Of a stretch of 64,000 nucleotides of DNA, positions 17,391 through 43,852 are shown piece by piece. The position numbers and the translations under genes were made by a program. Source of the DNA: Ophelia neglecta (lineage: Eukaryota); contig OZ260661.1 of assembly GCA_965285935.1 (NCBI GenBank), positions 14,012,001 through 14,076,000 on the forward strand, written 5' to 3'. The notes beneath the pieces are model-generated. The model saw only the letters and a list, made by a program, of their open reading frames with translations. It was not told the origin of the DNA and did not search any database. Each line of letters begins with the position of its first letter. The first letter of the stretch is position 1.

Positions 17391-17722
17391 TAGCTCAGAT
17401 TTTCGAAATCCGCCAGTAGAATGCCACTTAGATTTGAATTAAAACTCCATTTTTAATGAGCCCTAGAAACTCGCCTCTCATGTTATTAATATCATTATTA
17501 TCAATTTTAATAATTCGCCATTAAAATATAAAATGATTCTGATACATATAAAAACATAGCTCAGATTTTTTAAATCCGCCAGTAATATGCACTTAGATTT
17601 GAATTAAAACTCCATTTTTAATGAGCCCTAGAAACTTGCCTCTCATGTTATTGATATCAATATTATCAATATTAATAACTCGTCATCAAAATATAAAATG
17701 ATTCTGATACATATGAAAAACA
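17391..17722. repeat. Tandem direct duplication, about 166-bp period
   Basis: TAGCTCAGATTTT..AAATCCGCCAGTA...CTGATACATAT present at 17391 and 17557. Confidence 0.85.
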
Positions 17723-20260
17723 TATAAAAAAGACAAAAGTGGCCGCCTACATTTTCTTCTTGCCCCCCCCCCCCCCCCCTCCTACCCCTCCCTCCCCGAC
17801 TTAATAGGTTTAATGGGCTGAACCATCCAACATCTGGTCAGAAGGCAAATGAAGCGGTCTAAGAAGTGGGTAAGATGGGGCATTAATCTGAACCTGTGGT
17901 CATGCTAGAAATTACTAAAGCCAACGTATGTATCATACTGTGCTGTGAATCATGTGTGTAATATATATATCCATACCTAATCACTGCATTGATAGGTCCT
18001 TCTCTCAGTGGGTGTCTGTCCATATACTCCTAAAACTAAATATTATTCCTTGATTCCATCATAAGCCCGAAAGAGTGTGCTGTTTCTATCATTTAAATGA
18101 TAGCAGTTAAACTAGAACGAATGAGAATACTGTTCTCAGCCAAACCACTATAAACATGATCACTGTAACATGAACCGCAAACTGATAGTAACCGGATTCG
18201 TAGAGAGCAGGGTCCCTGAATACGAGGTAGCAGTACCCATCCCAGAGCACTCGAGACGCTTTCCGGGAGGCCATTTATAAACGCGGACGTGCGGAGGCTA
18301 CCGAAGGTCAAATACATTTCAGAGCCCTTATATGTCCAGAATAGATGGAATTCATTCTAGGGGAAGGTTTAGGGAATTGTGAATCTAGTGTTGTGTTATA
18401 ATCCGAGGTTTTACCTCCGCTAAGCCTAAGCAACTTCGCTTTTAATCCAAAGCCCTTTGCAGTACCGCACATATTAATTATGATAATTACGACACTTGCC
18501 TACCCCCCTACCCCCCCCCCTACCCCCCCCCCCCCCCCCAGAACCTCTCCCTACAAATCCGCATCACTTACATTTCTGTCGTCTGCCTCCACTAGTTCCG
18601 GGTGCATAGATTTTAGATAATACCACTTCACATATAGACCAAGTAGAAAGGTTAATAGTTCCTTATATAGAGCACAGTGCCTTTTTATAGAATACCAATC
18701 ACGACATCGATACAGTACAGTTTGTGGCGGAGCAGGAGGCAGGGTAGTACATAAGGAAGAACTTTTTGATGGAGGGGGGGGGGGGGGGCAATGAAGGTGC
18801 ACTTATTGAAACCAATAAAGACACGCCTGGTAATTTCGGACGTGTCCGTCGGCGTACCGTGGGGCCTAGCTAACCATGCAAATAATGACACCTCTGATGT
18901 GCTCACTCAGTCCTGCTGCACACTTTTTTCCACTTCATGGTTCGGTTGACTTGGACCCACCTGTCGTTTTCGGACACCTCCGAACAATTAAAAACTATCT
19001 ATTACCCTTAACCACATCGAACACTTTTCCTCTGGCTTGATCATGAGGGATTACTCCCACCTGTGCCTTCCAATTCCGTTCCCAACTTCCCCCACCCACC
19101 ATTGTCTTTGTCCAAATACCACACTTAGCTCTCACCCACCTAACCCACAAACTCTACCTCCCAAACCCATCCCCAACACGCCCCCTCCCCTCACCTCCAC
19201 CAAACTCCACTATCCCCTAAACCCTACCTTTACTATACTTTTCATTTTGTTTTTGTTCTTTTGTTTTTTCATCAAGCCAAAATGGGCAGCCACAGTTCAG
19301 CAATTCATTATCTAAGTCTCATTTTGCATGTTGCATGTTCGCATATTTTACTGTTCTGGCTACATAACTGCTGTTATCAGATAAGGCTCTATTTCGCATG
19401 ATTTCAATTCAAACTTGTATATTTTGTATTACAGAATTATTTCGTACATTAATTAATGCTTACATTATGTTATACATTCGTAACTTTATTTCTATTTTGT
19501 TTACAACATTTAATTAGGGGCCCCCTCCGTTAGCGGTGTTAACCTTGGAAGGGTATCCCTCAACCAGGTTACTTTCTATTGTTTTCCTTACTTATCCTGT
19601 CTTATCCTTACTTATCAAATTTAATTTTTTTTTCTTTCTTTATGCAATTATATTTTATTAGTTTTGTTTCTAGGTCAGTTTGGTTTTGAATACATGTTTT
19701 CTGGTTGAACATAAATGATCTGTATCTGTATCATTATGCCACAACCGCCCCCCCCCCCCCCGCCACCCTCCCCAACCACCACCACATACCCAACACTCCC
19801 ACTCTACACAGTAACCTGATGGGGAAATTATGGTAAAATAGTCTCTTTTCCTATACAAAAATACTATATTTACATAATTAGGATACTGCATTTAAGGATT
19901 GGACATCTCCAGTGACAAGTCCATCTTTCTGTACCCACACCACTGTTGAATAGCATTCCTTGTTTAGAGTTTAGTCTCTGGTAAAACGTTATTATTCATA
20001 ATTCATAGAATTGATATAACGTTTGAGGTTCCTATACACATCTAACAATGAGGATGTCCTCAGTTCTGGGTCGTCTACGAGTCAAGTTTATCTGAAAAAA
20101 AGCACCAAGGCAACTTGATAACATGATATTTGCAACATGCACGTAAGGGATGTTCCAGAAATTATCCTCAGGGAGGGGGTGGGGCGTGGGCGCAACGACT
20201 TCCTGTCCGGGATAGGGGGGGGGGGGGGGGGATTGGAAAAGGCCGTCCGCGATATGGGGG

Positions 20261-20266
20261 GTTAAA
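20261..20266. other. Left 6-bp target site duplication GTTAAA (right copy 45668-45673)
   Basis: Identical hexamer abuts both termini; 6-bp TSDs are typical of Polinton integrase insertion. Confidence 0.95.
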
Positions 20267-21007
20267 AGTAGTGTATGTAGGTCCGCGAGGCTCACTCACG
20301 AAAAATAAGAACAAAAATAAGAACAATAACAAAAGCACGTGGTGGAGCTTGATGGCACGTGGTGTCGGGGCCCAGAATCAATTCAACCGAAATTTAACCT
20401 TTGACCTCGATGCGGATTGGTCCCCCTGGGTCATGTGGGGGTAAAGGGTGGGGTGGGGGTAGAGGGGGTAGAGGGGGTGGAGGGGTATAGGAGGGGTATA
20501 GGAGGGGTATAGGAGGGATAGGGGAGGGGGGGAGGGGTGTGGTCACCGGGGTGTGGTCACCGGGGGAGGGGGGATTACTGGGGTGACATATGCTTATACG
20601 TGTACATGTACATACATGCACATGCAAAATACAGGCTGCTGGGGCGATCATACAGGTAAACCTAATTAATTTCATAATTAACTTTCGCGCGGATACCTGC
20701 GAAAGTCAATTTTATAACGCGCAGTCATTTCGAGCCTTTCTTCTAGGCTTTTGTTTCTTTAGCCAGACCCCCCCTAAGATGGCCGCCCGCTGCAAACAAT
20801 GAACCAGCTGAGGCAGCGAGTCGCCTGCCACTCACACACGCACACTGCCACACCCACACACAGTCCTATACGCTATACGCTGCAGCCTGTACAGTGTTGG
20901 CCTATAGCCAGCCAGCCGGCTGCACTGCACTGTGCTCGCACCGCTCGCTCCACCCTGCTCTCGCCATGCATTCAACGTGGTGAAGTAAGTTTGGCGGTAA
21001 AATGGGC
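20267..21007 (+). repeat. Left terminal inverted repeat (about 740 bp)
   Basis: Reverse complement of 44901-45667 with a few substitutions and indels. Confidence 0.95.
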
Positions 21008-21300
21008 ACCAACCATGCGTTTATAGATACTCATATATTAATAAGTATTAATTTGAATCATGCTTTTAAGAATCTCCCTTGCCACATTAATATTGACCTG
21101 GTATAAGAAAACATTATGACTAGCTTATGCATGTGAATGTTCATGCTGTGCATTTAACATTAACAATACGCTGATGTAGCGAAAATAGTATTTAGCTCAT
21201 GCTGTGTAGCGACCATTTTTGTTTTAGGGCGTCATGTTATACGCTTTTCACTATTACGAGCAGTTGGTAACGTGAATACTGACGAGGCGAACGTGCGTGT

Positions 21301-22107
21301 ATGATTATGGATGGTGATAGGAGTTTAGACCTAGTCTCAAACAAGCAAATGATGAATTCTTTCATGAACGATAACTCGATACCCGAGATGAGTCCATTTC
21401 GACTGGGTCAGGAAATGAATGATGCTTATCTTGAAGACGAAGAAAATGATTCGATCTGTGAGCTCAGGACTTCACTGACTTCCGAAGAAAGAAAGTGGGC
21501 TTCGCTTAATCATGAAGTTATCGACCGGGAGTCCATTGTGAAAACATTTTCGGACTATAGCAGTTTAACTGCCTATACATATATAGACTGGATCGTGTTT
21601 GACGATTTCAACATTCCAGCGGGAAAATCTGAACTCGTCTCAGAGCCTCAATATATAAATAGCGGCACTTACAGCTATAGAGTGGGGATGACTATGCAGC
21701 CTCCAGGATATGGAGAGGCCCGCGATTTTTATTCTCTCTTCTTTGTGCTATACCCTGGAGACTATGATCAACTATTGAAATGGCCGTTTCCATATAACAT
21801 AACATTAGCTCTGGTATCAAACTCCAAAGTTTTGTTAGAAGAAAAAAATCAAGGTGGAATTCATATTCCGGCATTCGGAATACCGTCTAAATGTGGTTTA
21901 ACCCCTAAATTACCGGTCGGTTTCCCTGATTTTTTACATAAATCGATGGCAAACAGAACTTTAGCAGGAGAAAATGTGTTTCGGAAGCTTACTAACGGGA
22001 AATCCTATCTTCACTTTGTGCTCAGAATAGAACTGGCAACTGGTAATAGTGTGTTAACTCAGGACACATCCTGTTTGTCTTTTAAAAATGAAACATTTCA
22101 ATACTAA
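21301..22107 (+). CDS. Stand-alone TRAF-C/MATH domain protein without RING or zinc fingers, carried by the Polinton
   Basis: SEPQY...YSYRVGM...GYGEARDFYSLFFVLYPGDYDQLLKWPFPYNITLALV...GFPDFL matches the TRAF MATH signature (SLFF.I..G.YD.LL.WPF); AATAAA at about 22149. Confidence 0.8.
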   Translation: MIMDGDRSLDLVSNKQMMNSFMNDNSIPEMSPFRLGQEMNDAYLEDEENDSICELRTSLTSEERKWASLNHEVIDRESIVKTFSDYSSLTAYTYIDWIVFDDFNIPAGKSELVSEPQYINSGTYSYRVGMTMQPPGYGEARDFYSLFFVLYPGDYDQLLKWPFPYNITLALVSNSKVLLEEKNQGGIHIPAFGIPSKCGLTPKLPVGFPDFLHKSMANRTLAGENVFRKLTNGKSYLHFVLRIELATGNSVLTQDTSCLSFKNETFQY

Positions 22108-22135
22108 GTTTGTTTATATCTATTGTTTGACTAGT

Positions 22136-22470
22136 CCTGTTTTTGAATAATAAATACTCTTTATCCAACCTCTATATACATATGTGTTTTATCAATCTGT
22201 CAGCATGTTTACGCACTGCAACGGCAGTCTGAACAGCTGACAGCAATTCAATACCAACTGCAACGTAACGGTTCGTTTAAATGTAACGGTTATTCGTTGT
22301 TCTTTTTCCATCATACAGTAAAAACTACATTAATTCGTTAAGCCTGCAAGCAAGATGGTGTTTATATGTTATTACTATGAGAAAAGCCTAAATCCCATTA
22401 GATCTGATAAACCATTAAAGTGCTAAATGTCACAGTAAAGTTAATCCTAATAGGCGCTCGGTAGAGATAG
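22136..22470 (+). pseudogene. Degenerate duplicate of the pPolB upstream region and first zinc-finger exon (intact copy about 23155-23455)
   Basis: CCTGTTTTTGAATAATAAAT...TTACGCACTGCAAC...GTAACGGTTATTCG...GATGGTGTTTA.ATGT..TTA...AAAAGCCTAA...GTTAATCC.AATAG..GCTCGGT shared by both; this copy has lost the reading frame. Confidence 0.8.
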
Positions 22471-22630
22471 CTAGATTACATTTATTCATCTAAAAAGATG
22501 TGTTATAAATAATAAAAATAAATAAATAAACCCGACCGATTGGTCTTTTATGATGATTGTGAAAGAACCTTTCTGGAAAGTGTGGTTGGCTCTGAAAAGA
22601 GCCGTTTTTGTATCCCCACCGTTTTCCATC

Positions 22631-22996
22631 TTACTTTCTAGTGAGAAAGAAAAACGGGTGGGGATTTTCCCGGATTTCTCTATCCCAATCTTCAGTTTGG
22701 GGTATGACGAAATCCGGGGAAGGTCCGAAAACTGCCGAGTATTTCGGGTCATTCATCGCAATTTCTTCACCCTCCTCCGTTCGGAAGTCACACTCCTTCA
22801 AGTGGTCTCTCGCGGTCTCTTCCGCAACCATGTGAAGAGCGCTATACGGACATCTTACTAACTTCTCATGTCGAGGATTCCGTTCGCACTTCAGCAGATG
22901 TCGAAGAAGTCGCGAGCACCGTACAACGTGTGCCCTGTTGTACGGGCAGACTATAAGATCAGTGGCAACTGAGTTTCTAGTGGTGAAAGACGCCAT
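22631..22996 (-). CDS. GTSF1: GTSF1/Asterix-like protein with two CHHC (U11-48K-type) zinc fingers and an EDWD segment, 121 aa, intronless
   Basis: CPYNRAH..RCSRL..HLLKC and CPYSALH.V.......HLKEC, then PQTEDWDREI...HPFF; ATG at 22996 in ACCATGG context, TATAAAAG about 45 bp upstream, minus-strand AATAAA at 22481-22486. Confidence 0.85.
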   Translation of the reverse strand: MASFTTRNSVATDLIVCPYNRAHVVRCSRLLRHLLKCERNPRHEKLVRCPYSALHMVAEETARDHLKECDFRTEEGEEIAMNDPKYSAVFGPSPDFVIPQTEDWDREIRENPHPFFFLTRK

Positions 22997-23346
22997 GGTG
23001 ATTTCAGAAATCAGAGTGGCTTTACCTAAGCACCCACGTACTTTTATAGTCAACTAGGTGCTTCTATGTCAAGCTAATTTACATAACGCGTAGCCAGCGC
23101 TAGCCAATAGAATGAGCTCGCACTAAGTTTATGCATATCTACTGCTAGACACGCCCTGTTTTTTGAATAATAAATGTTCTTTGTCTATCTTACATACATC
23201 TGTGTTTTATCCATATGTCAACATGGTTACGCACTGCAACTGTAGTCTGAAAAGCTAACGAAAAACCAATTCAAACTGTAAAGTAACGGTTATTCGTAAT
23301 ATATTTTCAGCACCATCCGGCAAAGTGCGTTCAGGCAGCAAGCAGG

Positions 23347-23572
23347 ATGGTGTTTAGATGTCGTTATTGCGATAAAAGCCTAAGTTCCACAAGAAATCTG
23401 ATTAACCATGAAAGCATTTGTAAGGTTAATCCGAATAGATGCTCGGTGAAAAAGCGTGTAACCTGTCCGCGTTGTGGGCATGATTACAACTGTAAAGGAG
23501 CTTACACAGCTCATTTGCCAAAGTGTAAAGGTGAGTGAATTACATTTGTTAAATTTCTAAGTATGTGAATGC

Positions 23573-23620
<48 letters not shown>

Positions 23621-26600
23621 TTACTCCTATTTTGTGAGCCAAATTATGTTAATTCACCGTTTTCTTCTTCTATTTTTTGGTACTAAGCTGCTGGTAAGGA
23701 AAATCAACTCAAGCAGAGTCATGTCAATCAGCCGCAAAGCACAAGCGATGATGATGGGAACATACCTACTCAAAGTAATCAGTCTACCTCTGCTGTCTCG
23801 GACCGCCTTGACACCTCAACATCGAGTCACGTTTTCAACCGATCTACGGGAAAACGACAGTCGGCCATGCCCACCAACTCCCATGCCAAAAACCCGAGAC
23901 GGAATGGTGATACCTTTGTTGTTAAAAGTGGAAAGAGACCCGCCGCTGCTCCATCTCCTACAAAACAATTTCAAAATATAGGGCTTGAATCTGTGCCTTC
24001 GATTGAACAGAACACCCCTCACCCTATGCGCTTTGAATATGAACAGTTACGGTCGGCGTTGGAAGAAGACTGGGAACCGGAAGCCGTGGAAAAAATTATT
24101 GACATGTACAAAAACAAGTGGCCGTCAATTCGACGACCGAACTATAGACTTAGCGCAAATGTAGTCCTGAGTATCAACCCAGATTTATTGGGAGAAATAA
24201 GATCAATTCTTAAGGATGTGCTCAAATTCCACAGGAAAGCAGTCAAGGTAAATATAACTTTAGGTAAAATGTTATATTCTAGAGTTCAAAATAAGGCGCG
24301 CTGGTTTTTTCCTACCTCTCATGGTAGGGATTCCGTTTTGGATGAGTTTACCAGTATTGCATCTGACGCTGATATTGAAAATATTATGAACGTAATTGAG
24401 CATAAAGATCTTGCAGTTGAACTTACCAAAAACAGACCTAACAGTTCGTGGTCTGGCGTCATGTTTACCAATGTCATTGTGACACATATACCTATTGCTG
24501 CGCTAAATAAAACACATGACGTTGTTAGAAGTATTAGGAAATGCTGTCGAGAGTTTCCTAATTGGAAAGCTAGAGATAATACTATTATCAGTCATTTTAC
24601 TGGTAAAAATAACAAGCGAAAACACTACAAGGATGGGCTTTGCTTTTTTAGAGCCCTTGCCCTTTGGAGATTAGAAGTTACATCTGCAAAGGACGTTAAA
24701 GTCGATGCAGAGTTTCACCAGCTGGTACAAACACTCTTTCTCGAATTTTGCGAGTTCAAAGAGAAATTACTGGTAGATAATGGGACACTAGATCCTAATT
24801 TTCCCAAGGCAAATGAGGGGGTTGACCGAGAGGATATAAGATTAAATGGAATTGCTCCTTGCGAATTACCACTGTTAGAAAAGTGCTTTGGAATAAATAT
24901 AGTTCTTACTAGTAAAGATGAGAGGATGGAAACAATGGTAAAATACATGTCTTGTTTTCGGCATGATCTGGATAATAAAAAAGTGCTCTACCTTGATTTA
25001 TATGAAGATCATGCATCCTACATTCCTGATATAGATAAATATGCAGGCACGTTCCATTGTAAAAATTGTGATTTTATTTGTGGTCGGTTTCAACATTTAA
25101 AACAACATTTGAAAAATCGACAAGGTTGTTCAAAGCACCCTGTACACAAATTTGAGGGTGGAATGTACAAGCGGCACCTGTCTGTCTTTGAAAAAATGGC
25201 TTTAAAGGGTATTAAATTTCAACAAGGTGAGCGGTGGTATCCCTATCATGCCTCATTTGATTTTGAGAGTTTGCATGAGAAGTCTGAGGACTATTCGACC
25301 ATTGATGAATCAGTGGAGGCCATGCTTGCTTCTGAAACTGGTAAAGGTGAAACTAAGTTCATAACCACCCACAGACCTATCTCCGTTAGCGTGTGTACTA
25401 ACGTGCCTGATTTCACTGACCCTCACCACATATGTAGGACAGTTAGTGAGCGAAAGTTAGTTACCGACATGTTTGATTATCTTGGTTGTGTGCAGAAGAA
25501 AGCTGCTAACATAATGCTTGAACAATTTCAAAGCTGCTTTGATCAACTCGATAAGCTTCATCAATCATTGTGCGAATATTCTCACACACTAAAAACAGAA
25601 AGGACAGGGCATTGCTTTAAAGATGATGAGATTGAACAAATCGATAAGTTTGTTTTGGATATGATCAATGCAGATATTGAAACAAAATGTCAAGCAAAAA
25701 AAACAAAGAAAGCTAACGCGCGTTCGGTAGTTATTAATCAAACTAGTGATTGTGAGGAGGAAATGGATGATATATTTGATCTAGAGGAAAATGCGTGTAA
25801 TATAATGGACGTTGATTTTGATGGAGAGTGTGTAAATGCTGAGCAGGGTGGAGAGGAGGATAGGGTAGGGGTGGCAGACGATGCTTATGACACACTTGAA
25901 TATATGTTGGATCCCAATGGGAAAATTTCGTTAAATGGAAAAGTCATTGACCGTTTTGAAAGGGAAGCAGAGGAGGTCAAATCTCTCATTTCATCGTTGA
26001 GACATTGGTGTACCGAGCTACCTGTTTTGGGTTTTAATTCAGGTACATATGATATGAAACTAATTAGAGAATACTTCCCTGAATGCCTAGAAGAATTAAC
26101 GGAGGTTGATGAGAAGGCAAAGGTACGCGTAATCAATGGTGGCAAAGGTTTTATGAAAGTTTCTAATGGTCAATTGAATTTTTTAGATGTGAAAAATTAC
26201 TTAGCACCCGGCAGTAGTTTAGCCGGATTTTTAAAGCAGAGCAACTGTGTTGAGACAAAAGGTACATTTTGTTATGAATATTTAGTGCATATAGATCAGT
26301 TGAAAGAAACTAGTCTACCTCCCATCGAATGTTGGTATAGTAAGCTTAAGGGATGCAGTAGTTTAGGTCGAACCGAAGAGGAAATTAAAAGCACCTACAA
26401 AGAAATGCAAAGCATTTGGGTCAGGGAAGACATGCACTGTCTCGGTGATTTTTTGAAATGGTATAATAATCAAGATGTTGCTCCAATGTGTCATGCTGTT
26501 GAAAAGCTGCGCTTACAGTATGTTAAAAAAGGCATAGACGCTTTCAAAATGTGTATTTCAAGTCCCGGTGCCTCTTTGCATATCGGTATGAAAATTGCCG

Positions 26601-28861
26601 AGGAAGAGGGGTATACATTCCCTCTGATCAATGAATCAAACTGCGACTTCCATTACAAAATTGAGCAAAATCTAACTGGTGGACCAAGTATTGTTTTCAA
26701 CCAAAAGAATTTCTCAAAAATCACAAAAATCAGGGGCACTGAAAATAAAGTCCAATCGATTAAAGGATTAGACGCTAATTCTCTGTATCCGTTCTGTATG
26801 AAACAAAACCTACCTACCTCTACATTTATTAGGAGGAGGGCTACTGAAGGTTTTAGAGCTGAACGGATGGATGGTTTTAATTCCAGCTTTGTTGAAAAGG
26901 AGTTTTTCACTTACCAAAACCACGAGAGAAAGCTACGCAAATTGACTCCGATTATAACAAAAGAAACTAATGGGGGGAGAGACATTAAAGTGGGAAGGTA
27001 CAGGTTGGATGGTCTATCTCAACCAGATCATGATATAAGTGAATTTGAAAGTGATGATATCGCCTTTTTTTCAAAGCATGGTTTATTAGATAGGATGATA
27101 AAACCCATCGCGTGGGAGGTTAATGGATGTTACCATCATGGCTGCTCTTGCATGATCAAAAAAATATTTGAACAGCTAGAACAAACTGAAAACCCCGAAG
27201 ACAAACTGCATAAAGCCTATTTGCTAGAAAAATTACTCCAACGTAGGTTTGAAACAGAGTCAAAAGCTATGAGCCTGGATGCACTTGGGTATGTCGTTGA
27301 AATAATGTGGGAGTGTGAGTGGCGTGAAATATTGAAAACTTTTTCATTTGACCAAATCGAAAATGGTCATAAGATAAAGCCCTATCTGACTCGCAAGTTT
27401 AACAGTGGCAAAGATAAAATAGATGAAGCGTTTTTGATACGCGAGCTAAGCATGGATTTCCCAGAGAACGGAGAAGGTTTTTTTGGTTTGGTCAGGTGTG
27501 ATATCGAAGTGCCGCAAGAAGATATCGACGATGGAAAGTGGGACGAATTGGCGCCCCTTTTTATAAATACTGTCATTACTGAAGAAGATTTAACCGACTA
27601 CCAAATTGAACGCTTATCTCAAATGCCGGGTGCTAAACAACCAGTGAAACTGAAAAGAAGAATGTTAATTGACTGTTGGAAAATAGTGGGAGGAAATGGT
27701 CTTTTCTGTACAGAATTGTTGAGGTGGTATATTAAATTTGGCTTGAGAATAACAAAAATTTATGAAATTTTTGAAACTGTTCCAGGCAAGCCTTTTAACA
27801 ACTATATAGACTCGGTCGTGAAAGATAGAGTTTCTAAAGATAAGGCCGAAGTTATGCTTGACGCATACAATATTGTTATTAACGATCAGGAAAGGATGCG
27901 ACTTTTATCAGCACAACAAATAGAAAAAATGCATAGAGAAGTAGAAAGGTTGAAAGACGTGTGTATGATAGGAGATAGGTCCAAGGTGGATATGAATAGT
28001 TTTTATGGTAAACTTCTCGAAAACAAATCAAAACAAGAGGAGTGTAAATTTGTTAGAGGCATGACATCATCGTGCATAGAAGCTAGCAAACCTGGTTTAA
28101 AAAGTCATGTGCGTATAGGAGAAGACTCCTATCAAATAGGTAGAGCTAAAAGAAATATTAATTTCAACATGCCCAGTTACCTTGGCCTGTTTGTTTTGCA
28201 ACTAGCTAAGCTAACCGTTTTGCGGTTTGTGTACGAGTTTCTGTACAAGTGGTGTGATCCCGACAAAGTTCAGGCTTGTCAGATGGATACCGATAGTTTT
28301 TATGTTGCTATCGCAGGTCAAGGATTAGAAGATTGTTTACGAGAACAAGATTCTGAACTAGAAAATGAATTGTATTTGGAAAATTTTCGGGAGGCTTGTA
28401 AAGTTTGGTTGGCTACCGAGGAAATGGGAAATCTTAGGGCCCCAGGTTATTTTAAACTGGAATGGTCAGGCGAACGTATGCTTTCCCTAGCCTCTAAAAC
28501 ATATGCTGCAGACGGAGAGGGTGTTCAAACAAAAGTTTCGGCTAAGGGTGTACAAAACAGACTCAACGTTGATTTATTAACTGTAGACAATTATGCTCAA
28601 TGTTTGGAATCTGGCCAGCCAGTGCTTGTCACTCAGGCGGGTATTAGAATGGGGCGGGATTATGAATGCGCTGAGTATTGTCAACCGCTCGACAATCATC
28701 TTGTTAAAACATATAAAGGGTGCAAAGTCGGGTTGAACGCATGTAATTTACTGAAACGGAGAGTGTTTTCTGATGGAAGCACCCTCCCACATGCAAGGGC
28801 GTTCGTGATTGAAAAAATAGAACCTATGAAATTTAAACGAAGGCGCCTTGATAGAACCTAG
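23347..28861 (+). CDS. polB: Protein-primed family B DNA polymerase; predicted join(23347..23530,23688..28861), about 1785 aa; unspliced ORF 23867-28861
   Basis: ExoI SFDFES, ExoII GFNSGTYD, ExoIII YNNQDV, polymerase motifs LDANSLYP, K...NSFYGK, MDTDS and KTY; OTU-like DGLCFFRAL and VSR-like EVNGCYHHGC..WECEW; donor AAG|GTGAGT and acceptor after a pyrimidine tract keep the frame. Confidence 0.93.
23576..23618. repeat. (AT)n microsatellite inside the predicted pPolB intron
   Basis: Directly visible. Confidence 0.9.
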
Positions 28862-28929
28862 AATATCAACATGATAAAGTTATATTTACTATGATGTGTA
28901 TTATATGTATATTGTATATTTATATGGTT

Positions 28930-29160
28930 ATACTAAAGAATTAAATCACAACAAGAATAATAATATATTTTTTATTAAACCAAGTTTATTTCTAATGAAT
29001 CATTCGAAAATAATGTGGTATTATGATTATATTCTATGTATTGAAAAATAAAATAAAATGTTCATTAACCAAGTCCACTTTTAATCAATCATTCGAAAAT
29101 AATGTGGTATTATGATTATATTCAATGTATTAAAGAAATAAAATGTTCATTTCTTCAATT
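28930..29160. terminator. AT-rich region between convergent genes, with an 89-bp-period duplication and AATAAA signals on both strands
   Basis: AATCATTCGAAAATAATGTGGTATTATGATTATATTC at 28998 and 29087; AATAAA and TTTATT hexamers; lies between the stops of polB and ORF 29173. Confidence 0.5.
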
Positions 29161-29172
29161 ATTTTTCTGTCA

Positions 29173-29922
29173 TCATCTTGTTATATATTTCTTTACTTTA
29201 GCTCTCGGATCTCCAACTTTATTCGACGTACACATCCGTTTTTTAGGCGAAGGTTTAAGCGGCGTGGGAGGGGGTTGATTGCCTGACACAGTCACTCCAT
29301 TGCTAGCCATCAGATGTACGGGGTAGGGTCCTGCAGGTATTTCCCGTTGAACTAAGTTAGGGTTGGGTTTTTTGTTGATCATTGCTGGCCCAGGTTGTTC
29401 AATATGACCCTGATTGGTAGAGAGCTGGTTCATATTCATCAAGTCAGTGAGAATATGGTCGGCGTTGTAGCTGTCGAACATTTGACCTTCTTGTCCCGCA
29501 TAGGCAGACATATTTTCGGGACACTGAGTTTGGCCTGTCATGTCAGCTACTCCTGCTGCTTCTCCGCTGCTCACCTCGCACTCTTGAAATTGCTCATCTC
29601 CCTCGTCATAAATGCTGTTAATGTCTTTCAGAATCCACACAGCAGGAGCGTTAATTTCTGCTCCTGCAGAAACTTTTACTAATGGTAAAGTGTTCAGGTT
29701 GGTTAAATCTCGCATCGATATATATATAGGACAGTCTCTTACCCCATCAACTATGAAACCGTAGTGAATTGTCCTATTATAGTCACCATCTTCATTCATC
29801 AATTCGCTGATCAGAGTCAATTTAGGTCGGCTATGGCGTTTTCGTTTTGCTATTTTAGTCACTTCATTAGGTAGATCAAGAGCTACTGGTAGAGCCATGA
29901 CGCTTGTTGTTGTGTCTTCCAT
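29173..29922 (-). CDS. Polinton hypothetical protein (249 aa) with low-complexity C-terminal half and NLS-like PSPKKRM
   Basis: Long ATG-initiated ORF within the element; no family recognised. Confidence 0.65.
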   Translation of the reverse strand: MEDTTTSVMALPVALDLPNEVTKIAKRKRHSRPKLTLISELMNEDGDYNRTIHYGFIVDGVRDCPIYISMRDLTNLNTLPLVKVSAGAEINAPAVWILKDINSIYDEGDEQFQECEVSSGEAAGVADMTGQTQCPENMSAYAGQEGQMFDSYNADHILTDLMNMNQLSTNQGHIEQPGPAMINKKPNPNLVQREIPAGPYPVHLMASNGVTVSGNQPPPTPLKPSPKKRMCTSNKVGDPRAKVKKYITR

Positions 29923-30190
29923 GACTAATACTTTTTGAATGAACCGTAAAGTCAGTTTACCAAAAAAATATACAGAGTCTTGACATTCCCAGACAGCATG
30001 AATTTTTCAAATATTATCCGCTACCAGTTTAACCGTCACCCGCTTATTATACATTAACTAGCGCAGCTTGAGATCAGCTGGAAGCATTATTTATGACTCA
30101 CCAACTGTCTAACGGTCACCGTCTAATTTGAAAGAAAAGAATCTCACACCATCGCGTCATGTTATGAGTGACAAAAGGTCAACATCTGGT

Positions 30191-31705
30191 TTATATCCAA
30201 GTGTAAGCAATCTGCCTGTTGCCCATCAATTCTAGATTGTCGTTGTATGTACTGAAAATTATCATGTTCATAGAATGGGCAAGGGGCTGCTTAAATTTAA
30301 CATGAAAGTTTATGGGTGATGTATTTAAAGTATCGAAAATATTAGAACTAGGGTCTTGGTCTTGGTCATTGGTCAAATCAAATGGGAAAAGCGTGTACCC
30401 TTCTTCACACCACTCTCTGTAATTCAAATCTAATGTTTTATTACCGAGTGAATTAAAACCAATCTTTTTAAACTCTTTGTAAGGGTCCATAGCACTGCCT
30501 GTCAGTGCGGCTTCACTGTTATCTTCGGCCAAATTCAAATTTTTATATTTAGAAGCCGGATAATCTTTTCCATTTCTGGTGAAATACATTTCGTCTATAT
30601 TAGCGTTTACAAAATCAAATATGCTATGTCCGTATGACCCTTGGAAGTTGGTTGTGTTTAGCATACCCACTATTACTCTCCGCGGAGATTGATTATTAAA
30701 CAAGCTCTGAGCATTGTAAGTACCTGTGCCTGCAGGAATATTATGTTGTTTAAGCTCGGTTCTGTTAGCTAGGGGGTAATTTGCAGGGTGGGATCTGAGG
30801 TATGAGTTGACTTTCATTTGATCATTATCATCAAGTTTATGACGTACCAGGTTTATGTATATGTCTTCTATAACCATTTTAGTATCCGGTGCCGTGTTGG
30901 CGTTAGCCGGACCCCTCCCATTTTTCCAAAAAATACTCTCGTCGTTAGCAGTCAAATCAACTGTTATGTCAGTATTGGGAATAATGCACTTTGGCTGTTC
31001 GAATAAAAAATGTTTAAGTTTTCCCGATATATAATAACTTTTTGTGGGTTCAGCCGTTTTCCCCAACCTCAAACTTATGTTAGGATTAGATTCGTGGTAT
31101 GGGATGTCTTCTGTACCGACGGCAACGGCGGTTCGGCAAGGTTTGCTAAGTTTTTCGAACCATGTCGTTTCCCCTAAATATTCTACATCTTCTTCCTTCG
31201 TAGTGGTTAATGTTTTAATCCATGCACTAATTGCATAGTTTTGATCGTGGTCGTGAAGAATTTCTTGATTAATAGACACCTTAACAAACTTCCACAGTGA
31301 ATGTAAAATTTGAGTTTCTGGGTAAGACAGCATATCTGCATTCAAAATTGTATTTTCGGCATTTGTAGTTGATTTAGGTTTGTTAGCTCCGTTTCTGTTC
31401 ACAATTTTAAATTTAATACGTATTTCACTTTCTTTAAGGTTCATCCATAAAGCATTACCCCCCAAGAGAAAGGTAAACACACGCACACCAACCGCATCTT
31501 GTTGTATACCTTGTAGTGGTCTAATCAATTCTTCTGTGGTGTTTGTTATCGACCTCTGTACCGGAGGTTTGTAGCCGACATCAAATTGAGGTAGAAAGAC
31601 GGAATTAAGCCTAGCATTGGGGATGGGACTTTTTTCAGTAGGTTCCTGCATAGATCCGCTCTGTCCTTTGAAAGCATGTTTTCTTTTTTTCATACTAGGA
31701 GGCAT
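30191..31705 (-). CDS. Polinton major capsid protein (double jelly-roll, PY-like), 504 aa
   Basis: Size and motifs LHSLWK.VKVSIN, PRRVIVGML...FQGSY..SIFDF, GYTLFPFDLT.DQD typical of Polinton major capsid proteins. Confidence 0.88.
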   Translation of the reverse strand: MPPSMKKRKHAFKGQSGSMQEPTEKSPIPNARLNSVFLPQFDVGYKPPVQRSITNTTEELIRPLQGIQQDAVGVRVFTFLLGGNALWMNLKESEIRIKFKIVNRNGANKPKSTTNAENTILNADMLSYPETQILHSLWKFVKVSINQEILHDHDQNYAISAWIKTLTTTKEEDVEYLGETTWFEKLSKPCRTAVAVGTEDIPYHESNPNISLRLGKTAEPTKSYYISGKLKHFLFEQPKCIIPNTDITVDLTANDESIFWKNGRGPANANTAPDTKMVIEDIYINLVRHKLDDNDQMKVNSYLRSHPANYPLANRTELKQHNIPAGTGTYNAQSLFNNQSPRRVIVGMLNTTNFQGSYGHSIFDFVNANIDEMYFTRNGKDYPASKYKNLNLAEDNSEAALTGSAMDPYKEFKKIGFNSLGNKTLDLNYREWCEEGYTLFPFDLTNDQDQDPSSNIFDTLNTSPINFHVKFKQPLAHSMNMIIFSTYNDNLELMGNRQIAYTWI

Positions 31706-31754
31706 AGCTCTGACACGTCTGTTCCGGTGAGAACTAAAATGTCTAATGGACGCT

Positions 31755-32426
31755 TTAAGCTTCAGACAATACCTTAATAATATGAGGGTTGGAAAAAAGA
31801 ATTTTCTTTTTAGTCAATTGATTGCCTTTGGCTAAAAAAGTAAGGTGCTTTAGGATTTTGTCCTTCCCTTGGAAATCAACTTTTTTTTTCAATATATTTT
31901 TTGCTATATTGGAAAACATTTTAATATCATTGATACCGCTCTTAGACCAGAGGCGGGTGAGAATATCACTTTTCTTCAACCCTCTATATGTTTTCAACAG
32001 CTCCGATACGGAAGTGGAATTAAATCCGTTGTCACCAACACCGCCATTGTTAACTGAGACTTTCACTGATGGTTTCTTTTTTTCGCCCGTTTTCTTTTTC
32101 AATTTAGTGTGGATCTTTTTCAATTTTCTCACACCGGACTCTGATTCTTCATTTTGCCCGTTATCATCAAGCTCTGTTTCACTGTCATTGATGTCGGCAA
32201 TTTTCTTTTTACCTTTACCAAAAGGAAGTTTTTTTCTGGACTTAGACTTAGATTTGGTTGTTTTATTTCTTCGTTTACTAACGACTCGACCATTGAGTTT
32301 CCTTTCTCTTACTTCCATCATGTTCAAACTTTTTGTTGTTGGTTCATTCCAGTGGGCTAAGCTGGTACCATTATTCCATTGATCCATCCTAAAATCAAAG
32401 GCAGTTTTAATTAGAATCATAGGCAC
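31755..32426 (-). CDS. Lys-rich basic protein (223 aa), possible core or DNA-condensing protein
   Basis: ORF with K/R-rich tracts, co-oriented with and directly upstream of the major capsid gene. Confidence 0.6.
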   Translation of the reverse strand: MPMILIKTAFDFRMDQWNNGTSLAHWNEPTTKSLNMMEVRERKLNGRVVSKRRNKTTKSKSKSRKKLPFGKGKKKIADINDSETELDDNGQNEESESGVRKLKKIHTKLKKKTGEKKKPSVKVSVNNGGVGDNGFNSTSVSELLKTYRGLKKSDILTRLWSKSGINDIKMFSNIAKNILKKKVDFQGKDKILKHLTFLAKGNQLTKKKILFSNPHIIKVLSEA

Positions 32427-32477
32427 ATCATAAGCATATCAAACACGCATGTAACATTAAACCGACCTGTACATACA

Positions 32478-32666
32478 TCAGAACCGCAATCCTAATGTAG
32501 GGTGGGGCTTAAACTTTTTCCTCGGTCCTCCAAACGCCGCTTTAAATAGAGGAGCCATTAAAGTTGAACCAACAGCAAATGCAAGTGACAATGATCCGCC
32601 TTTTTGACAACGCTTCTTTCGCCTTTTCAGTTTTTTCCTCACCGAACATTTTCTCTTGCTAGCCAT
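32478..32666 (-). CDS. Small basic core-like protein (62 aa) with QKGG motif followed by a hydrophobic segment
   Basis: MASKRKCSVRKKLKRRKKRCQKGGSLSLAFAVGSTLMAPLF; layout resembles adenovirus pX-type precursors. Confidence 0.6.
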   Translation of the reverse strand: MASKRKCSVRKKLKRRKKRCQKGGSLSLAFAVGSTLMAPLFKAAFGGPRKKFKPHPTLGLRF

Positions 32667-32805
32667 TCTTAAACTGTCTTAACTCTATGCTGACACTCAC
32701 ATATATATTCATCCGTTTAAATCTAAGCTTATTTTTTTACAAGCTTTTTGAGGAGACAGGTCATAACATGGCGAGGTTGGTTTTCTTTATGCATCAAATA
32801 TTTTA

Positions 32806-35589: not shown

Positions 35590-35591
35590 TT

Positions 35592-36050
35592 ATTCAAATT
35601 GTTAAAGGTCTACCGAATACGGAAATATTTAACAAAATAAGAAAAGACAGGCTCATTATTCTAGATGATTTGATGTCGGATTTACATGGTCAGACTGTGA
35701 ACGATTTGTTTACAAAAGGCTCTCATCACACTAAAACTAGTGTCTGCTTATCTACTCAAAATTTATTCGATGCACATATGAGAACGGTGTCCATCAATTC
35801 TCACTTTATGGTTATTATGAAAAACCCTCGAGACAAAAAAAAATTTAATAATTTAGCCTGTCAAATGTCATCTAAAAGTGGAAATAATTTTCTCAACGAT
35901 TGCTTTAGATGTGCTACATACAAACCTCATGGGTATCTATTTATGGCCCATGATCAAAATACTCCTGACATTCTAAGATTTCGAACTTTTATTTTTCCTG
36001 ACGACCCTAAGAATGTAGTTTTTGTACCGTGGAATAAATCTGGTATTTAA
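35592..36050 (+). pseudogene. Polinton A32/FtsK-HerA-like packaging ATPase, C-terminal half only (Walker A absent)
   Basis: In-frame IQIVKGLP...RLIILDDLM (Walker B), LFTKGSHH..SVCLSTQNLF, RTVSINSHFMVIMKNPRD, HGYL, TPD.LRFRT.IF; no GxxGxGK found upstream. Confidence 0.88.
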
Positions 36051-36091
36051 ACTCATTACTTGTCATATAAAACGCATTACGAGCTTAAGCC

Positions 36092-36529
36092 ATGGTTAGT
36101 GTGGGTGTACTTCGTGCCAGTGTTCGAGTTCCTGTTCTGTCTCAGGAGGGTGCTGGGAACCATCGACAGAGGGGCAGAGGTCAGGGTAAGGTTAGATGGA
36201 GACAGAAAGGGAGAGGCGCCAGGGCTCGAATGAAAAGGACTAAAGCTTTGAACACTTTAGCAGTAGCTGTTAACAAGAGGTCAAAAGTCATTAGGCCGGT
36301 AGCAAAACCATCGGATGATAGAATAAACAGGAGAAAGACTGGCAAAGTTTTAAATCGACTGCACTCGTCTATCAAAAGGTCAGGCATCAAGAATTTTTTA
36401 ACACATGTGGGCAAGAATGTGGTTCGAGCCGCTAAAATAGGCGGTACACGAGTTTTAAAACATACTGGAAAACACGTAAAACGGGAATTGAACAAAATAT
36501 TAAGTTCTGGCATCAATTCTTTAGGATAG
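36092..36529 (+). CDS. Basic core-like Polinton protein (145 aa) with QEGAG, QRGRG and QKGRG motifs
   Basis: R/K-rich ORF in CCATGG context with repeated QxGxG; TATAAAA just upstream. Confidence 0.7.
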   Translation: MVSVGVLRASVRVPVLSQEGAGNHRQRGRGQGKVRWRQKGRGARARMKRTKALNTLAVAVNKRSKVIRPVAKPSDDRINRRKTGKVLNRLHSSIKRSGIKNFLTHVGKNVVRAAKIGGTRVLKHTGKHVKRELNKILSSGINSLG

Positions 36530-36559
36530 ATAACAATTCAACCAACAGACCCGCTAATC

Positions 36560-37408: not shown

Positions 37409-37416
37409 AAAGAAAA

Positions 37417-37752
37417 ATGCCAAGGAGGAAAGGGATATCAAAACAGGATGTGTCCTTTGAGAACAGGTTGGATAATATTTTCACAAATCCACGTAGTGCA
37501 GGAAGCTTTGGGGGTGTAGATGCACTGTTTAAAGCTGTTCATAAAGATTGAAATAAAAAGTTCATTTCAAAAGGCAGAGTGAAAAATTATTTGTTATTTC
37601 AAAGAGCTTACACCCTACACAAACAACCCAAACAAGATCTTCCGAAAGATATCAACCCGGAAATTAACCAAGGCGTCCAACAAGATTTTTTTGGCACGGG
37701 TAACGAAGTGAAGCTGGAATTACATTTTAGACCTGTTAAACATGGCCACTAG
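37417..37752 (+). pseudogene. Integrase N-terminal remnant fused in frame to a penton-like C-terminus, with an internal stop (TGA 37549-37551)
   Basis: Manual translation MPRRKG...LDNIFTNPRSAGSFGGVDALFKAVHKD*NKKFISKGRVKNYLLFQRAYTLHKQPK...EVKLELHFRPVKHGH*; GSFGGV...AYTLHK is the Polinton integrase N-terminal signature; no DDE core. Confidence 0.8.
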
Positions 37753-40697: not shown

Positions 40698-40939
40698 TAG
40701 ATACATAACTTGAATTTGAAACATATGCTTGGAAGGGCAGTCAGCTCATGTGATTTTCTAGACTCCCACGAGGCAATGACTCAATCTTCCCGCGCGTAGT
40801 CAATATGTGCAGGGTCAACTAACACAGCTGTTTCTTTTTAATATAATGTTTGCCTGGTCATCGTTCCGTGTGACATCAAAGTAAGAACGTTGATTATATT
40901 TCTGACATTTTGACATTCATGTGAGAGTGAATTATTAGT

Positions 40940-41386: not shown

Positions 41387-41427
41387 GGTCAACTTTTATA
41401 AGGGCTTAGCAAGTGAAATAACATATA

Positions 41428-41823: not shown

Positions 41824-41826
41824 ACT

Positions 41827-43783: not shown

Positions 43784-43852
43784 GACTTGAAATGAACAAA
43801 TGAAAGAATGGAGGTGTACTTACTCTTTTATTTTTCTCGGAATTGTAGAATA

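What the first reader, a model, noticed from the sequence alone, without database searches (positions are those of the whole stretch)
22631..22996. Polinton encodes a GTSF1/Asterix-like piRNA-pathway cofactor: candidate anti-piRNA protein
Seen: inside TIR- and TSD-bounded viral DNA is an intact, intronless 121-aa gene with its own TATA box, Kozak ATG and polyA signal. It has two CHHC fingers (CPYNxxH..RxxR...HLxKC; CPYxxxH...HLxEC) followed by P..EDWDREI...PF. Known: GTSF1/Asterix has this layout, binds RNA through finger 1, binds PIWI through a Trp-containing central segment, and potentiates PIWI silencing and slicing of transposons. As I recall the mammalian sequence, the viral copy keeps the finger-1 arginines and the EDWD Trp, alters neighbouring Trp residues and stops right after this segment. 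Inference: a germline-integrating virus has captured a component of the pathway that silences it, either as a decoy or dominant-negative PIWI inhibitor or to modulate silencing of competitors. I do not know of a described Polinton GTSF1, but I cannot search the literature here.
Basis: partly seen in the sequence, partly recalled or inferred. Interest (0 to 1): 0.93.

Follow-up and report, generated by a model that had tools for sequence, protein, structure and literature searches.

The report
Virus-like transposon carrying a GTSF1 gene
A 25-kb virus-like transposon integrated in an unidentified animal genome carries an intact copy of GTSF1, the small zinc-finger protein that switches on the PIWI/piRNA transposon-silencing machinery. 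This makes it a candidate viral modulator of that defence, but whether it blocks or helps silencing is untested.

Summary
Window 22631..22996 (minus strand) is an intact, intronless 121-aa ORF with two CHHC zinc fingers. Its best solved relatives are mouse and silkworm GTSF1 (E 1.9e-13 and 1.4e-11), and U11-48K scores only 0.22.

The ORF lies inside a 25,401-bp element (20267..45667). The element has ~740-bp terminal inverted repeats, a 6-bp target duplication, a protein-primed B polymerase and a probable double-jelly-roll capsid gene. No integrase was detectable.

New findings:
- A canonical histone 3' stem-loop (Rfam, above gathering score) begins 27 nt after the stop codon.
- The ~700-bp gene cassette is bracketed by ~310-bp direct repeats that are about 25% diverged. 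The terminal repeats differ at under 1% of aligned bases. This suggests an old acquisition kept open by selection.

The protein keeps all eight zinc ligands, the four basic RNA-binding positions and the most conserved PIWI-binding Trp.

Sequence therefore supports a working PIWI-cofactor homologue, not specifically an inhibitor.

No close relative exists in 15 billion proteins, and no paper in the library describes a Polinton GTSF1.

The parts
20267..45667 (.). Whole Polinton/Maverick-type element, 25,401 bp
   Evidence: Bounded by inverted repeats and a 6-bp duplication. GC 0.389. CpG o/e is 0.95 against 0.66 in the flanks.
20261..20266 (.). Left copy of the 6-bp target-site duplication (GTTAAA)
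45668..45673 (.). Right copy of the 6-bp target-site duplication (GTTAAA)
20267..21007 (.). Left terminal inverted repeat
   Evidence: 5 mismatches in 679 aligned bases, 8 gap openings in G-rich repeats. Its 12-nt terminus is identical to that of the right end.
44901..45667 (.). Right terminal inverted repeat
21301..22107 (+). 268-aa MATH/TRAF-C domain gene, a second host-like accessory gene
   Evidence: Pfam TRAF-mep_MATH 2e-11. PDB TRAF family hits from 5e-7 down to 4e-4.
22109..22425 (+). Direct repeat, copy 1. It starts just after the MATH gene's stop codon and brackets the GTSF1-like cassette.
   Evidence: 216 of 286 aligned bases identical to copy 2, 5 gap events, JC distance 0.30.
22481..22486 (-). 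AATAAA signal, 144 nt after the stop codon
22563..22608 (-). Histone-type 3' UTR stem-loop. The stem-loop proper is 22588..22603 and begins 27 nt after the stop codon.
   Evidence: Rfam RF00032, 37.6 bits (gathering 34), E 2e-7, full-length match. It is the only exact copy of the 16-mer in the window.
22631..22996 (-). GTSF1-like ORF, 121 aa plus stop, intronless and intact
22883..22957 (-). CHHC zinc finger 1 (aa 14-38; ligands C17, H23, H33, C37; basic R26, R29, K36, R39)
   Evidence: Predicted with pLDDT of about 90.
22787..22861 (-). CHHC zinc finger 2 (aa 46-70; ligands C49, H55, H65, C69). It carries several rare residues at otherwise conserved positions.
22667..22702 (-). Central segment with the conserved Trp (aa 99-110, W104), predicted as a short helix
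   Evidence: W in 106 of 150 relatives. Aligns with mouse W107. Helix 104-110.
23042..23048 (-). TATA box, 46-52 nt upstream of the ATG
   Evidence: read from sequence.
23128..23425 (+). Direct repeat, copy 2, on the other side of the cassette
23867..28861 (+). Protein-primed family B DNA polymerase, 1664 aa, one open frame. It has a ~750-aa N-terminal extension shared with its nearest relatives.
   Evidence: PF03175 7.8e-5, below Pfam's cut-off. There are 78 relatives, the best at 52% identity and 1599-1928 aa long. Five of 9 aligned members hit PF03175, best 6.9e-19.
30191..31705 (-). 504-aa ORF, probable double-jelly-roll major capsid protein
   Evidence: The model is low-confidence (pLDDT 45). 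It still gave 58 BFVD matches at E<=1e-3, dominated by major capsid proteins of MELD virus, adomavirus, mavirus, virophages, adintovirus and giant viruses. One remote homologue was found.
32802..35589 (.). 15-bp-period minisatellite, about 186 copies, inside the element
35670..36050 (+). 126-aa ORF, possibly a remnant of the packaging ATPase (my reading only, unverified)
   Evidence: No family hit. The resemblance is by eye only.
41827..42297 (+). 156-aa ORF with His, Asp, Gln and Cys in the order of adenain-like (clan CE) proteases (motif reading only)
   Evidence: Translation. No Pfam or PDB hit.
37742..41386 (+). Three ORFs (327, 661 and 148 aa) that share a repeated module of unknown function
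   Evidence: BLASTP 4e-7 and 8e-7 between the first two. The 661-aa ORF holds the module twice. No family hits.

Best explanation
Shown: this is a genuine GTSF1-family gene carried as an accessory cassette of a Polinton/Maverick-type virus-like element.

Inferred:
- The gene was acquired from a cellular GTSF1, possibly of chelicerate type. It was acquired well before this copy integrated and has been kept open by selection in the element's lineage.
- It is built like a histone gene: intronless, with a TATA box, a short leader and a stem-loop 3' end. Its mRNA is therefore probably made and stabilised in replicating cells such as dividing germline and early embryo.
- The protein has two zinc fingers with an intact basic RNA-binding ridge on finger 1 and the family's conserved Trp helix. 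Most likely it docks on target-engaged PIWI-piRNA complexes as cellular GTSF1 does.
- The element thereby modulates piRNA silencing. My leaning, from the logic of a silenced element and the unusual residues in finger 2, is competition with the host cofactor that dampens silencing.

The direction of the effect is not shown by any result here.
For: Identity:
- Pfam two CHHC stretches, 1.9e-11.
- PDB GTSF1 1.9e-13 and 1.4e-11, against U11-48K at 0.22.
- 818 relatives at E<=1e-3. Of the 20 best-scoring clusters looked up, 13 carry a name, and 8 of those are named gametocyte-specific factor 1 or GTSF1-like.
- The fold matches GTSF1 in the SIWI-piRNA-target-GTSF1-Maelstrom complex and mouse GTSF1.

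Functional residues:
- All 8 zinc ligands are kept.
- R26, R29, K36 and R39 correspond to the four basic residues needed for RNA binding and PIWI potentiation in mouse. W104 corresponds to mouse W107.

Context:
- TIRs, 6-bp TSD, pPolB and a capsid-like gene.

Cassette and age:
- ~310-bp direct repeats bracket the promoter, ORF and stem-loop. They are 24.5% diverged (JC 0.30), while the TIRs have 5 mismatches in 679.
- If the repeats date the insertion, an open 121-codon frame by chance has P of about 0.004.
- The cassette also has its own composition (GC3 0.51 against 0.29-0.48 for the other ORFs).

Expression signals:
- RF00032 above gathering score, 27 nt after the stop. TATA and start context.

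Possible pattern:
- A preprint reports a lepidopteran polinton subgroup linked to a gene labelled mael.
- Maelstrom and GTSF1 sit on the same PIWI complex in 9nhc.
Against: - Only one copy was seen. No protein at 50% identity or more exists among 15 billion, so conservation across copies and dN/dS are untested.
- That blank is uninformative, because the capsid-like gene also has no close relative in the collection.
- No expression data are available. The host is unidentified.
- This copy has no detectable integrase and at most a possible remnant of the packaging ATPase (by eye only), so it may be decaying.
- Integration is recent (TIRs nearly identical), so an intact ORF in this copy alone proves nothing.
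- The selection argument rests on the assumption that the flanking repeats arose with the cassette.
- The protein has every feature of an active GTSF1. The short tail and single Trp are common in cellular members. Nothing in the sequence favours inhibition over activation.
- Finger 2 carries rare residues at conserved positions (S52, A58, T61, A62, D70, F71). Their meaning is unknown and they could reflect relaxed constraint.
Confidence: 0.45

Rival explanations
1. Passenger gene. This is a working GTSF1 paralogue that the element picked up and spreads as cargo. It has no role in the element's own biology. Any benefit, such as extra or differently timed PIWI cofactor, goes to the host, or the gene is simply neutral baggage that has not yet decayed.
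For: - Polintons/Mavericks are reported to carry gene and transposon cargo.
- GTSF1 paralogues are numerous and turn over in animals.
- The protein looks like an ordinary short GTSF1.
- A second host-like gene (MATH/TRAF-C) sits next to it.
Against: - The cassette's flanking repeats are about 25% diverged while the frame is open. This argues for selection within the element lineage rather than recent baggage.
- The best cellular relative is only 43% identical.
Confidence: 0.25
2. Non-PIWI use of the CHHC fingers. The protein binds structured RNA such as tRNA or the element's own transcripts, or it binds another partner. Nematode GTSF-1 was rewired in this way to an RNA-dependent RNA polymerase.
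For: - GTSF1 finger 1 binds tRNA and structured RNA.
- Nematode GTSF-1 binds RRF-3 and not PIWI.
- Finger 2 and the linker of the window protein carry several rare residues.
Against: - Nematode proteins that left PIWI lost the central aromatic residues and the basic ridge.
- The window protein keeps both.
Confidence: 0.1
3. Neutral relic. The gene is a recently duplicated or captured sequence in a decaying element. It is neither expressed nor selected, and it is open only because little time has passed.
For: - The TIRs are nearly identical, so the insertion is young.
- The copy lacks a detectable integrase and holds a 2.8-kb minisatellite.
- No relative closer than 43% exists to prove constraint.
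Against: - All functional residues are intact despite at most 43% identity to anything known.
- The gene has complete and orderly signals, including a perfect histone stem-loop.
- The divergence of the bracketing repeats against the open frame gives P of about 0.004.
Confidence: 0.15

Closest known systems
Cellular GTSF1/Asterix (mouse GTSF1, PDB 6x46; silkworm GTSF1 in PDB 9nhb-9nhs)
   Same: - Two N-terminal CHHC fingers, a basic ridge on finger 1 and a central Trp segment.
- Small size.
- Sequence E 1.9e-13 and 1.4e-11, and the fold match.
   Different: - Encoded inside a virus-like transposon.
- Intronless, with a histone-type 3' stem-loop.
- Keeps only one of the three mouse PIWI-binding Trp residues.
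- Has no C-terminal region beyond the central segment.
- Has several rare residues in finger 2.
- At most 43% identical to any known member.
Short GTSF1 paralogues such as silkworm Gtsf1-like (PMC10711660)
   Same: Two fingers followed by a short tail. A single conserved Trp in the tail mediates partner binding.
   Different: These are cellular genes. Their partners (Ago3, Vreteno) are known, whereas the partner here is unknown.
TART-A capture of an nxf2 fragment in Drosophila (PMC7785250)
   Same: A mobile element has taken up sequence from a piRNA-pathway gene, and this is interpreted as counter-defence.
   Different: That case is a gene fragment acting through antisense piRNAs in a retrotransposon. 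This is a complete protein-coding gene in a DNA virus-like element.
Polinton/adintovirus subgroup linked to a gene labelled mael in Lepidoptera (bioRxiv 10.1101/2025.02.07.637071)
   Same: A Polinton-type element associated with a homologue of a PIWI-complex factor. Maelstrom and GTSF1 occur together in PDB 9nhc.
   Different: - The gene and the host group differ.
- The preprint does not mention piRNAs or propose a function.
- I did not see its sequences.
Cargo genes of nematode Mavericks (Widen et al. 2023, as cited)
   Same: Host-type genes carried inside Maverick/Polinton elements.
   Different: Those are protease and kinase genes tied to horizontal transfer, with no link to the silencing pathway.
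Replication-dependent histone genes (Rfam RF00032)
   Same: Intronless, with a TATA promoter, a short leader and a stem-loop a few tens of nucleotides after the stop codon.
   Different: The ORF is not a histone, and an AATAAA follows the stem-loop.

Membership tests
GTSF1/Asterix family | Two tandem N-terminal CHHC (U11-48K-type) zinc fingers | tested here: met
   Pfam PF05253, two stretches, 1.9e-11. All eight ligands lie in invariant columns.
GTSF1/Asterix family | More similar to GTSF1 than to the other CHHC proteins (U11-48K, TRM13) | tested here: met
   PDB GTSF1 1.9e-13 and 1.4e-11 against U11-48K 0.22. Named top hits are GTSF1 or GTSF1-like. Foldseek best hits are 9nhc_E and 6x46.
GTSF1/Asterix family | Basic RNA-binding surface on finger 1 (mouse R26, R29, K36, K39) | tested here: met
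   R26, R29, K36 and R39 are present at the aligned positions. This is a sequence-level test only.
GTSF1/Asterix family | Central region with conserved aromatic residues that bind PIWI (mouse W98, W107, W112) | tested here: inconclusive
   Only the W107 equivalent (W104) is kept. It is the one conserved family-wide (106 of 150 relatives), and one Trp is the commonest state.
GTSF1/Asterix family | Small protein (described as under 20-30 kDa) | tested here: met
   121 aa.
GTSF1/Asterix family | Binds target-engaged PIWI and potentiates slicing or silencing; germline expression | not testable with these tools
   No expression or interaction data are available.
Polinton/Maverick (polintovirus/adintovirus-like) elements | 15-25 kb element with long terminal inverted repeats | tested here: met
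   25,401 bp with ~740-bp TIRs.
Polinton/Maverick (polintovirus/adintovirus-like) elements | 6-bp target-site duplication | tested here: met
   GTTAAA on both sides.
Polinton/Maverick (polintovirus/adintovirus-like) elements | Protein-primed family B DNA polymerase | tested here: met
   The window ORF alone scores PF03175 7.8e-5, under Pfam's cut-off. Five of 9 aligned relatives hit it, best 6.9e-19.
Polinton/Maverick (polintovirus/adintovirus-like) elements | Retrovirus-like (rve) integrase | tested here: not met
   No rve hit in any of the 23 ORFs of the element that were scanned, which cover every ORF of 120 aa or more (threshold E 10 for 16 of them, 0.01 for the others). This copy is therefore Polinton-type by its ends, polymerase and capsid, but it is not shown to be a complete Polinton.
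Polinton/Maverick (polintovirus/adintovirus-like) elements | Adenain-like cysteine protease | tested here: inconclusive
   No Pfam or PDB hit. ORF 41827..42297 has the catalytic residues in the expected order by my reading.
Polinton/Maverick (polintovirus/adintovirus-like) elements | FtsK/A32-type packaging ATPase | tested here: inconclusive
   No family hit. There is one possible remnant ORF, judged by eye only.
Polinton/Maverick (polintovirus/adintovirus-like) elements | Double-jelly-roll major capsid protein | tested here: inconclusive
   The model has pLDDT 45. Even so, it gave 58 BFVD hits at E<=1e-3, dominated by DJR capsid proteins, with TM-scores of only 0.15-0.26.
Replication-dependent histone-type 3' end | Stem-loop matching RF00032 at or above the gathering score, on the coding strand, shortly after the stop codon | tested here: met
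   37.6 bits against 34, full model. The stem starts 27 nt after the stop.
Replication-dependent histone-type 3' end | Downstream purine-rich element for U7 snRNP; non-polyadenylated transcript | not testable with these tools
   A purine-rich run follows the stem-loop. Its likeness to a U7 site is only my recollection. No transcript data are available.
U11-48K / TRM13 (other CHHC proteins) | Single CHHC finger in a larger spliceosomal or tRNA-methyltransferase protein | tested here: not met
   This protein has two fingers and only 121 aa. U11-48K scores E 0.22. No TRM13 domain was found.

The most novel reading that the evidence does not exclude
Polinton-type viruses of animals carry protein mimics of PIWI cofactors: GTSF1 here, and possibly maelstrom in lepidopteran polintons. 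These would act as protein-based suppressors of piRNA silencing. Here the gene is expressed from a histone-like, replication-coupled cassette, so that the inhibitor is present when the element replicates in dividing germline or embryonic cells.
Probability: 0.2. Interest if true: 0.9.

Novelty: new variant of a known kind. Interest (0 to 1): 0.7.

Why it matters
The piRNA pathway is the main germline defence of animals against transposons. Its genes evolve fast, as if in an arms race, yet few transposon- or virus-encoded factors that act on it were found in the library searched here. The closest case found, TART-A and nxf2, works through RNA.

A complete GTSF1 homologue with all known functional residues, carried by a virus-like element that integrates in the germline, gives a concrete candidate for such a factor. 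It also gives a defined interface, the GTSF1-PIWI contact now seen in solved complexes, on which to look for signs of conflict.

The histone-type 3' end on a non-histone gene is itself unusual. It would tie the gene's expression to DNA replication.

If the gene proves to be a passenger instead, it still documents Polinton-mediated spread of a silencing-pathway gene.

Tried and rejected
Searches that gave nothing useful:
1. The word-index protein search with the 121-aa protein found nothing.
2. The exhaustive representative search found only relatives at 43% identity or less. The same blank for the capsid-like gene (one hit at 25%) shows that the collection does not sample this element family. 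'No close kin' therefore says nothing about sister copies.
3. Host identification failed. The closest polymerase clusters carry no organism names. An exact look-up of the flanking C2H2 zinc-finger ORF found nothing. Rfam and tRNA scans gave no taxon-specific hit.
4. Pfam (at thresholds from E 0.01 up to 10), PHROGs and PDB sequence searches of the other ORFs gave no integrase, ATPase, protease or capsid family. A 9-sequence polymerase profile found no solved polymerase.

Analyses that were inconclusive:
5. Phylogeny. The NJ sister of the window protein is unresolved, with Ixodes in 23% and Nymphon in 16% of 100 bootstraps (one search timed out). A chelicerate-type origin is only a lead, helped by an N-terminal motif shared with tick, horseshoe-crab and sea-spider proteins.
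6. BFVD holds no GTSF1-like viral protein at E<=1e-3.

Ideas rejected:
7. A retrocopy inserted into the element. There is no poly(A) remnant at the 3' side of the gene, and the gene has its own promoter and stem-loop.
8. A second stem-loop-like site at 43102..43117 has 2 mismatches and lies inside an ORF on the other strand. I take it as chance.
9. An 11-nt match between 21015 and 23569 is at chance level.
Full report
**1. The observation**

On the minus strand, 22996 down to 22631 is an uninterrupted ORF of 121 codons plus TAA. Pfam finds the CHHC finger (PF05253) twice, E 1.9e-11.

A sequence search of all solved structures puts mouse GTSF1 first (6x46_A, E 1.9e-13, residues 13-117) and silkworm GTSF1 second (9nhb_E, 1.4e-11). 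The other solved CHHC protein, U11-48K, scores 0.22.

An exhaustive HMMER search of 1.84 billion representatives gives 818 hits at E<=1e-3. The best is 43% identical. Of the 20 best-scoring clusters I looked up, 13 carry a name. Eight of those are named gametocyte-specific factor 1 or GTSF1-like, from sea spider, horseshoe crab, spider mite, frog, coelacanth, a teleost, Komodo dragon and fly. The best-scoring hit is an unnamed tick (Ixodes) protein.

An AlphaFold2 model from a 64-sequence alignment has pLDDT 78, with both fingers near 90 and a short helix at 104-110. Its two significant PDB matches are GTSF1 in the SIWI-piRNA-target-GTSF1-Maelstrom complex and mouse GTSF1.

**2. Residues**

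All eight zinc ligands sit in columns that are 97-100% invariant among 150 relatives.

Arif et al. (bioRxiv 10.1101/2021.05.04.442675) report two requirements for mouse GTSF1. It needs R26, R29, K36 and K39 for RNA binding and for potentiating PIWI slicing. It needs W98, W107 and W112 for tight PIWI binding. Alignment numbering coincides through finger 1.
- The window protein has R26, R29, K36 and R39.
- W104 aligns with W107 and is kept.
- The W98 and W112 positions are D95 and R109.

Against 150 relatives it is ordinary.
- The W104 column is Trp in 106 of 150 relatives.
- One Trp in the 55 residues after finger 2 is the commonest state (65 of 150).
- A quarter of relatives have 55 residues or fewer after finger 2. 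Some of these may be fragments.
- Silkworm Gtsf1L is such a short paralogue. It uses one conserved tail Trp to bind its partners (PMC10711660).

Two features do set the window protein apart.
- It has rare residues at otherwise conserved positions, mostly in finger 2 and its surroundings: S52 where 83% have Asn, and also A58, T61, A62, D70 and F71.
- It is distant from everything known.

**3. The element**

Inverted repeats of about 740 bp lie at 20267-21007 and 44901-45667. They show 5 mismatches in 679 aligned bases, plus indels in G-rich microrepeats. The 12 terminal bases are identical and begin AG. GTTAAA flanks both ends. The element is 25,401 bp.

Gene content:
- A 1664-aa ORF hits the protein-primed polymerase family weakly on its own (PF03175, 7.8e-5). 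It has 78 relatives, the closest at 43-52% identity and 1325-1928 aa long. Five of nine aligned members hit PF03175, with a best E of 6.9e-19.
- The 504-aa ORF on the minus strand gave a poor model (pLDDT 45). That model still drew 58 BFVD matches at E<=1e-3. They are dominated by double-jelly-roll major capsid proteins of MELD virus, adomaviruses, mavirus, virophages, adintoviruses and giant viruses. I rate this as suggestive.
- No integrase, packaging ATPase or protease reached any threshold.
- One ORF has catalytic residues in the order of adenain-like proteases. One short ORF may be an ATPase remnant. Both are my reading only.
- A 2.8-kb minisatellite of 15-bp units lies inside the element.

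In counts: integrase not detected; packaging ATPase at most one truncated remnant, unverified; polymerase and capsid-like genes open.

The element is Polinton/Maverick-type by its ends, target duplication, polymerase and probable capsid. This copy is not shown to be complete.

Its CpG o/e is 0.95, against 0.66 in the flanks and 0.32 in a flanking zinc-finger ORF. Together with the near-identical TIRs, this points to a recent integration.

**4. The gene's own signals**

Upstream on the coding strand are a TATA box (23042-23048) and a strong start context.

Downstream, Rfam finds a full-length histone 3' stem-loop at 22563..22608 on the same strand. It scores 37.6 bits against a gathering score of 34, E 2e-7. 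It is the only Rfam match in the 64 kb that reaches a gathering score. The stem begins 27 nt after the stop. The 16-mer is unique in the window.

The unit therefore has the layout of a replication-dependent histone gene around a GTSF1 ORF. No paper in the library links histone stem-loops with Polintons.

**5. The cassette**

A ~310-bp segment that starts right after the stop of the neighbouring MATH/TRAF-C gene (22109-22425) recurs at 23128-23425. The promoter, ORF, stem-loop and AATAAA of the GTSF1-like gene fill the ~700 bp between the two copies.

The two copies share 216 of 286 aligned bases, with 5 gap events (JC distance 0.30). This is far more divergence than between the TIRs.

Suppose the repeats arose when the cassette entered. 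Then the cassette is much older than this integration. An unconstrained 121-codon frame that had drifted half that distance would be expected to carry about 2.4 stops and 3.2 indels, giving P(open) of about 0.004. This is an analytic estimate made from counts on the natural sequence.

This is indirect evidence for purifying selection in the element's lineage. It fails if the repeats predate the cassette.

The ORF also has the highest GC3 in the element (0.51 against 0.29-0.48).

**6. Origin**

The NJ position of the protein is unresolved. Its first residues resemble those of tick, horseshoe-crab and sea-spider GTSF1s in a region that is otherwise variable. A chelicerate-type source is a lead and no more.

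The host of the window could not be identified.

**7. Function**

GTSF1 binds PIWI only after target engagement and converts it to an active state. [quoted passage not shown] Those regions set paralogue specificity.

The window protein has what is known to be needed for RNA binding and for the core PIWI contact. I therefore infer that it binds target-engaged PIWI complexes.

Whether it then activates or blocks cannot be read from the sequence. For an element that is itself a piRNA target, interference is the more plausible selective advantage, and finger 2 is atypical. That is why I lean to competition with the host cofactor. This part is inference, and the rivals (passenger gene, non-PIWI RNA binder, neutral relic) are not excluded.

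**8. Literature**

No paper in the library combines GTSF1, Asterix, CHHC or U11-48K with Polinton, Maverick or adintovirus, other than a general review. BFVD has no GTSF1-like viral structure at E<=1e-3.

Two neighbouring cases exist.
- TART-A carries a fragment of the piRNA-pathway gene nxf2 (PMC7785250).
- A 2026 preprint version reports a lepidopteran polinton subgroup linked to a gene labelled mael, without discussing piRNAs. Maelstrom shares a solved complex with GTSF1.

**9. Limits and steps left out**

I did not fetch other copies or relatives of the element, or the loci of the closest homologues. Presence in sister copies and dN/dS therefore remain open.

The window holds no N runs. 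No contig looked human, and no spliced model was needed.

I recalled some short consensus motifs from memory while reasoning. These were the histone stem-loop and its downstream element, the protease residue order, and zinc-finger linkers. None served as evidence except where marked as my reading. The one typed pattern was the window's own 16 nt.

**10. Verdict**

The identity of the gene and its viral context are well supported.

I rate this a new variant of a known kind, with interest 0.7.

Noticed in passing
window 21301..22107 (+): The element's other accessory gene encodes a 268-aa protein with a TRAF-type MATH domain and no RING or zinc fingers (Pfam 2e-11; PDB TRAF, TRAF3 and TRAF2 at 5e-7 to 1e-5). 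A TRAF-C-only protein in a virus-like element could interfere with host TRAF signalling.
   Followed up: partly
window 32802..35589: A 2.8-kb minisatellite of 15-bp units (about 186 copies, 91% matches) lies inside the element. It sits between the capsid-side genes and a short ORF that may be an ATPase remnant.
   Followed up: partly
window 37742..41386 (+): Three consecutive ORFs (327, 661 and 148 aa) share a module of unknown function. The 661-aa ORF contains it twice (BLASTP 4e-7 and 8e-7). There are no family hits.
   Followed up: partly
window 23867..26140 (+): The polymerase has a ~750-aa N-terminal extension with one weak C2H2/C2HE-like finger. Its closest relatives (1599-1928 aa) are equally long and show a similar weak finger.
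   Followed up: partly
window 20267..45667 against the flanks: CpG o/e is 0.95 in the element, 0.66 in the flanks and 0.32 in the flanking zinc-finger ORF. The host appears to methylate its DNA, and the element has not yet lost CpGs.
   Followed up: no
protein P0001 (Ixodes scapularis, KAM7292538.1): The best-scoring relative contains two apparently identical GTSF1-like units, including the residues just before each start-like Met. This looks like a gene model fused across a tandem or repeated intronless unit. Its locus was not fetched.
   Followed up: no
window 60963..62402 (-): A long ORF with an array of C2H2 zinc fingers (Pfam zf-H2C2_2 5e-63), presumably a host gene. An exact look-up found no record.
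   Followed up: partly
window 23576..23618: A (TA)21 microsatellite lies about 250 bp upstream of the polymerase start codon.
   Followed up: no
window 1..2335 and 17391..17724: The flanking DNA is rich in C-rich tandem repeats (periods 17, 44/88, 46/87 and 165).
   Followed up: no
proteins P0161 and P0165: The two closest polymerase relatives come from unnamed contigs of 28.8 and 29.2 kb (ENA, NCBI). That size is close to a whole element or genome. They were not fetched.
   Followed up: no
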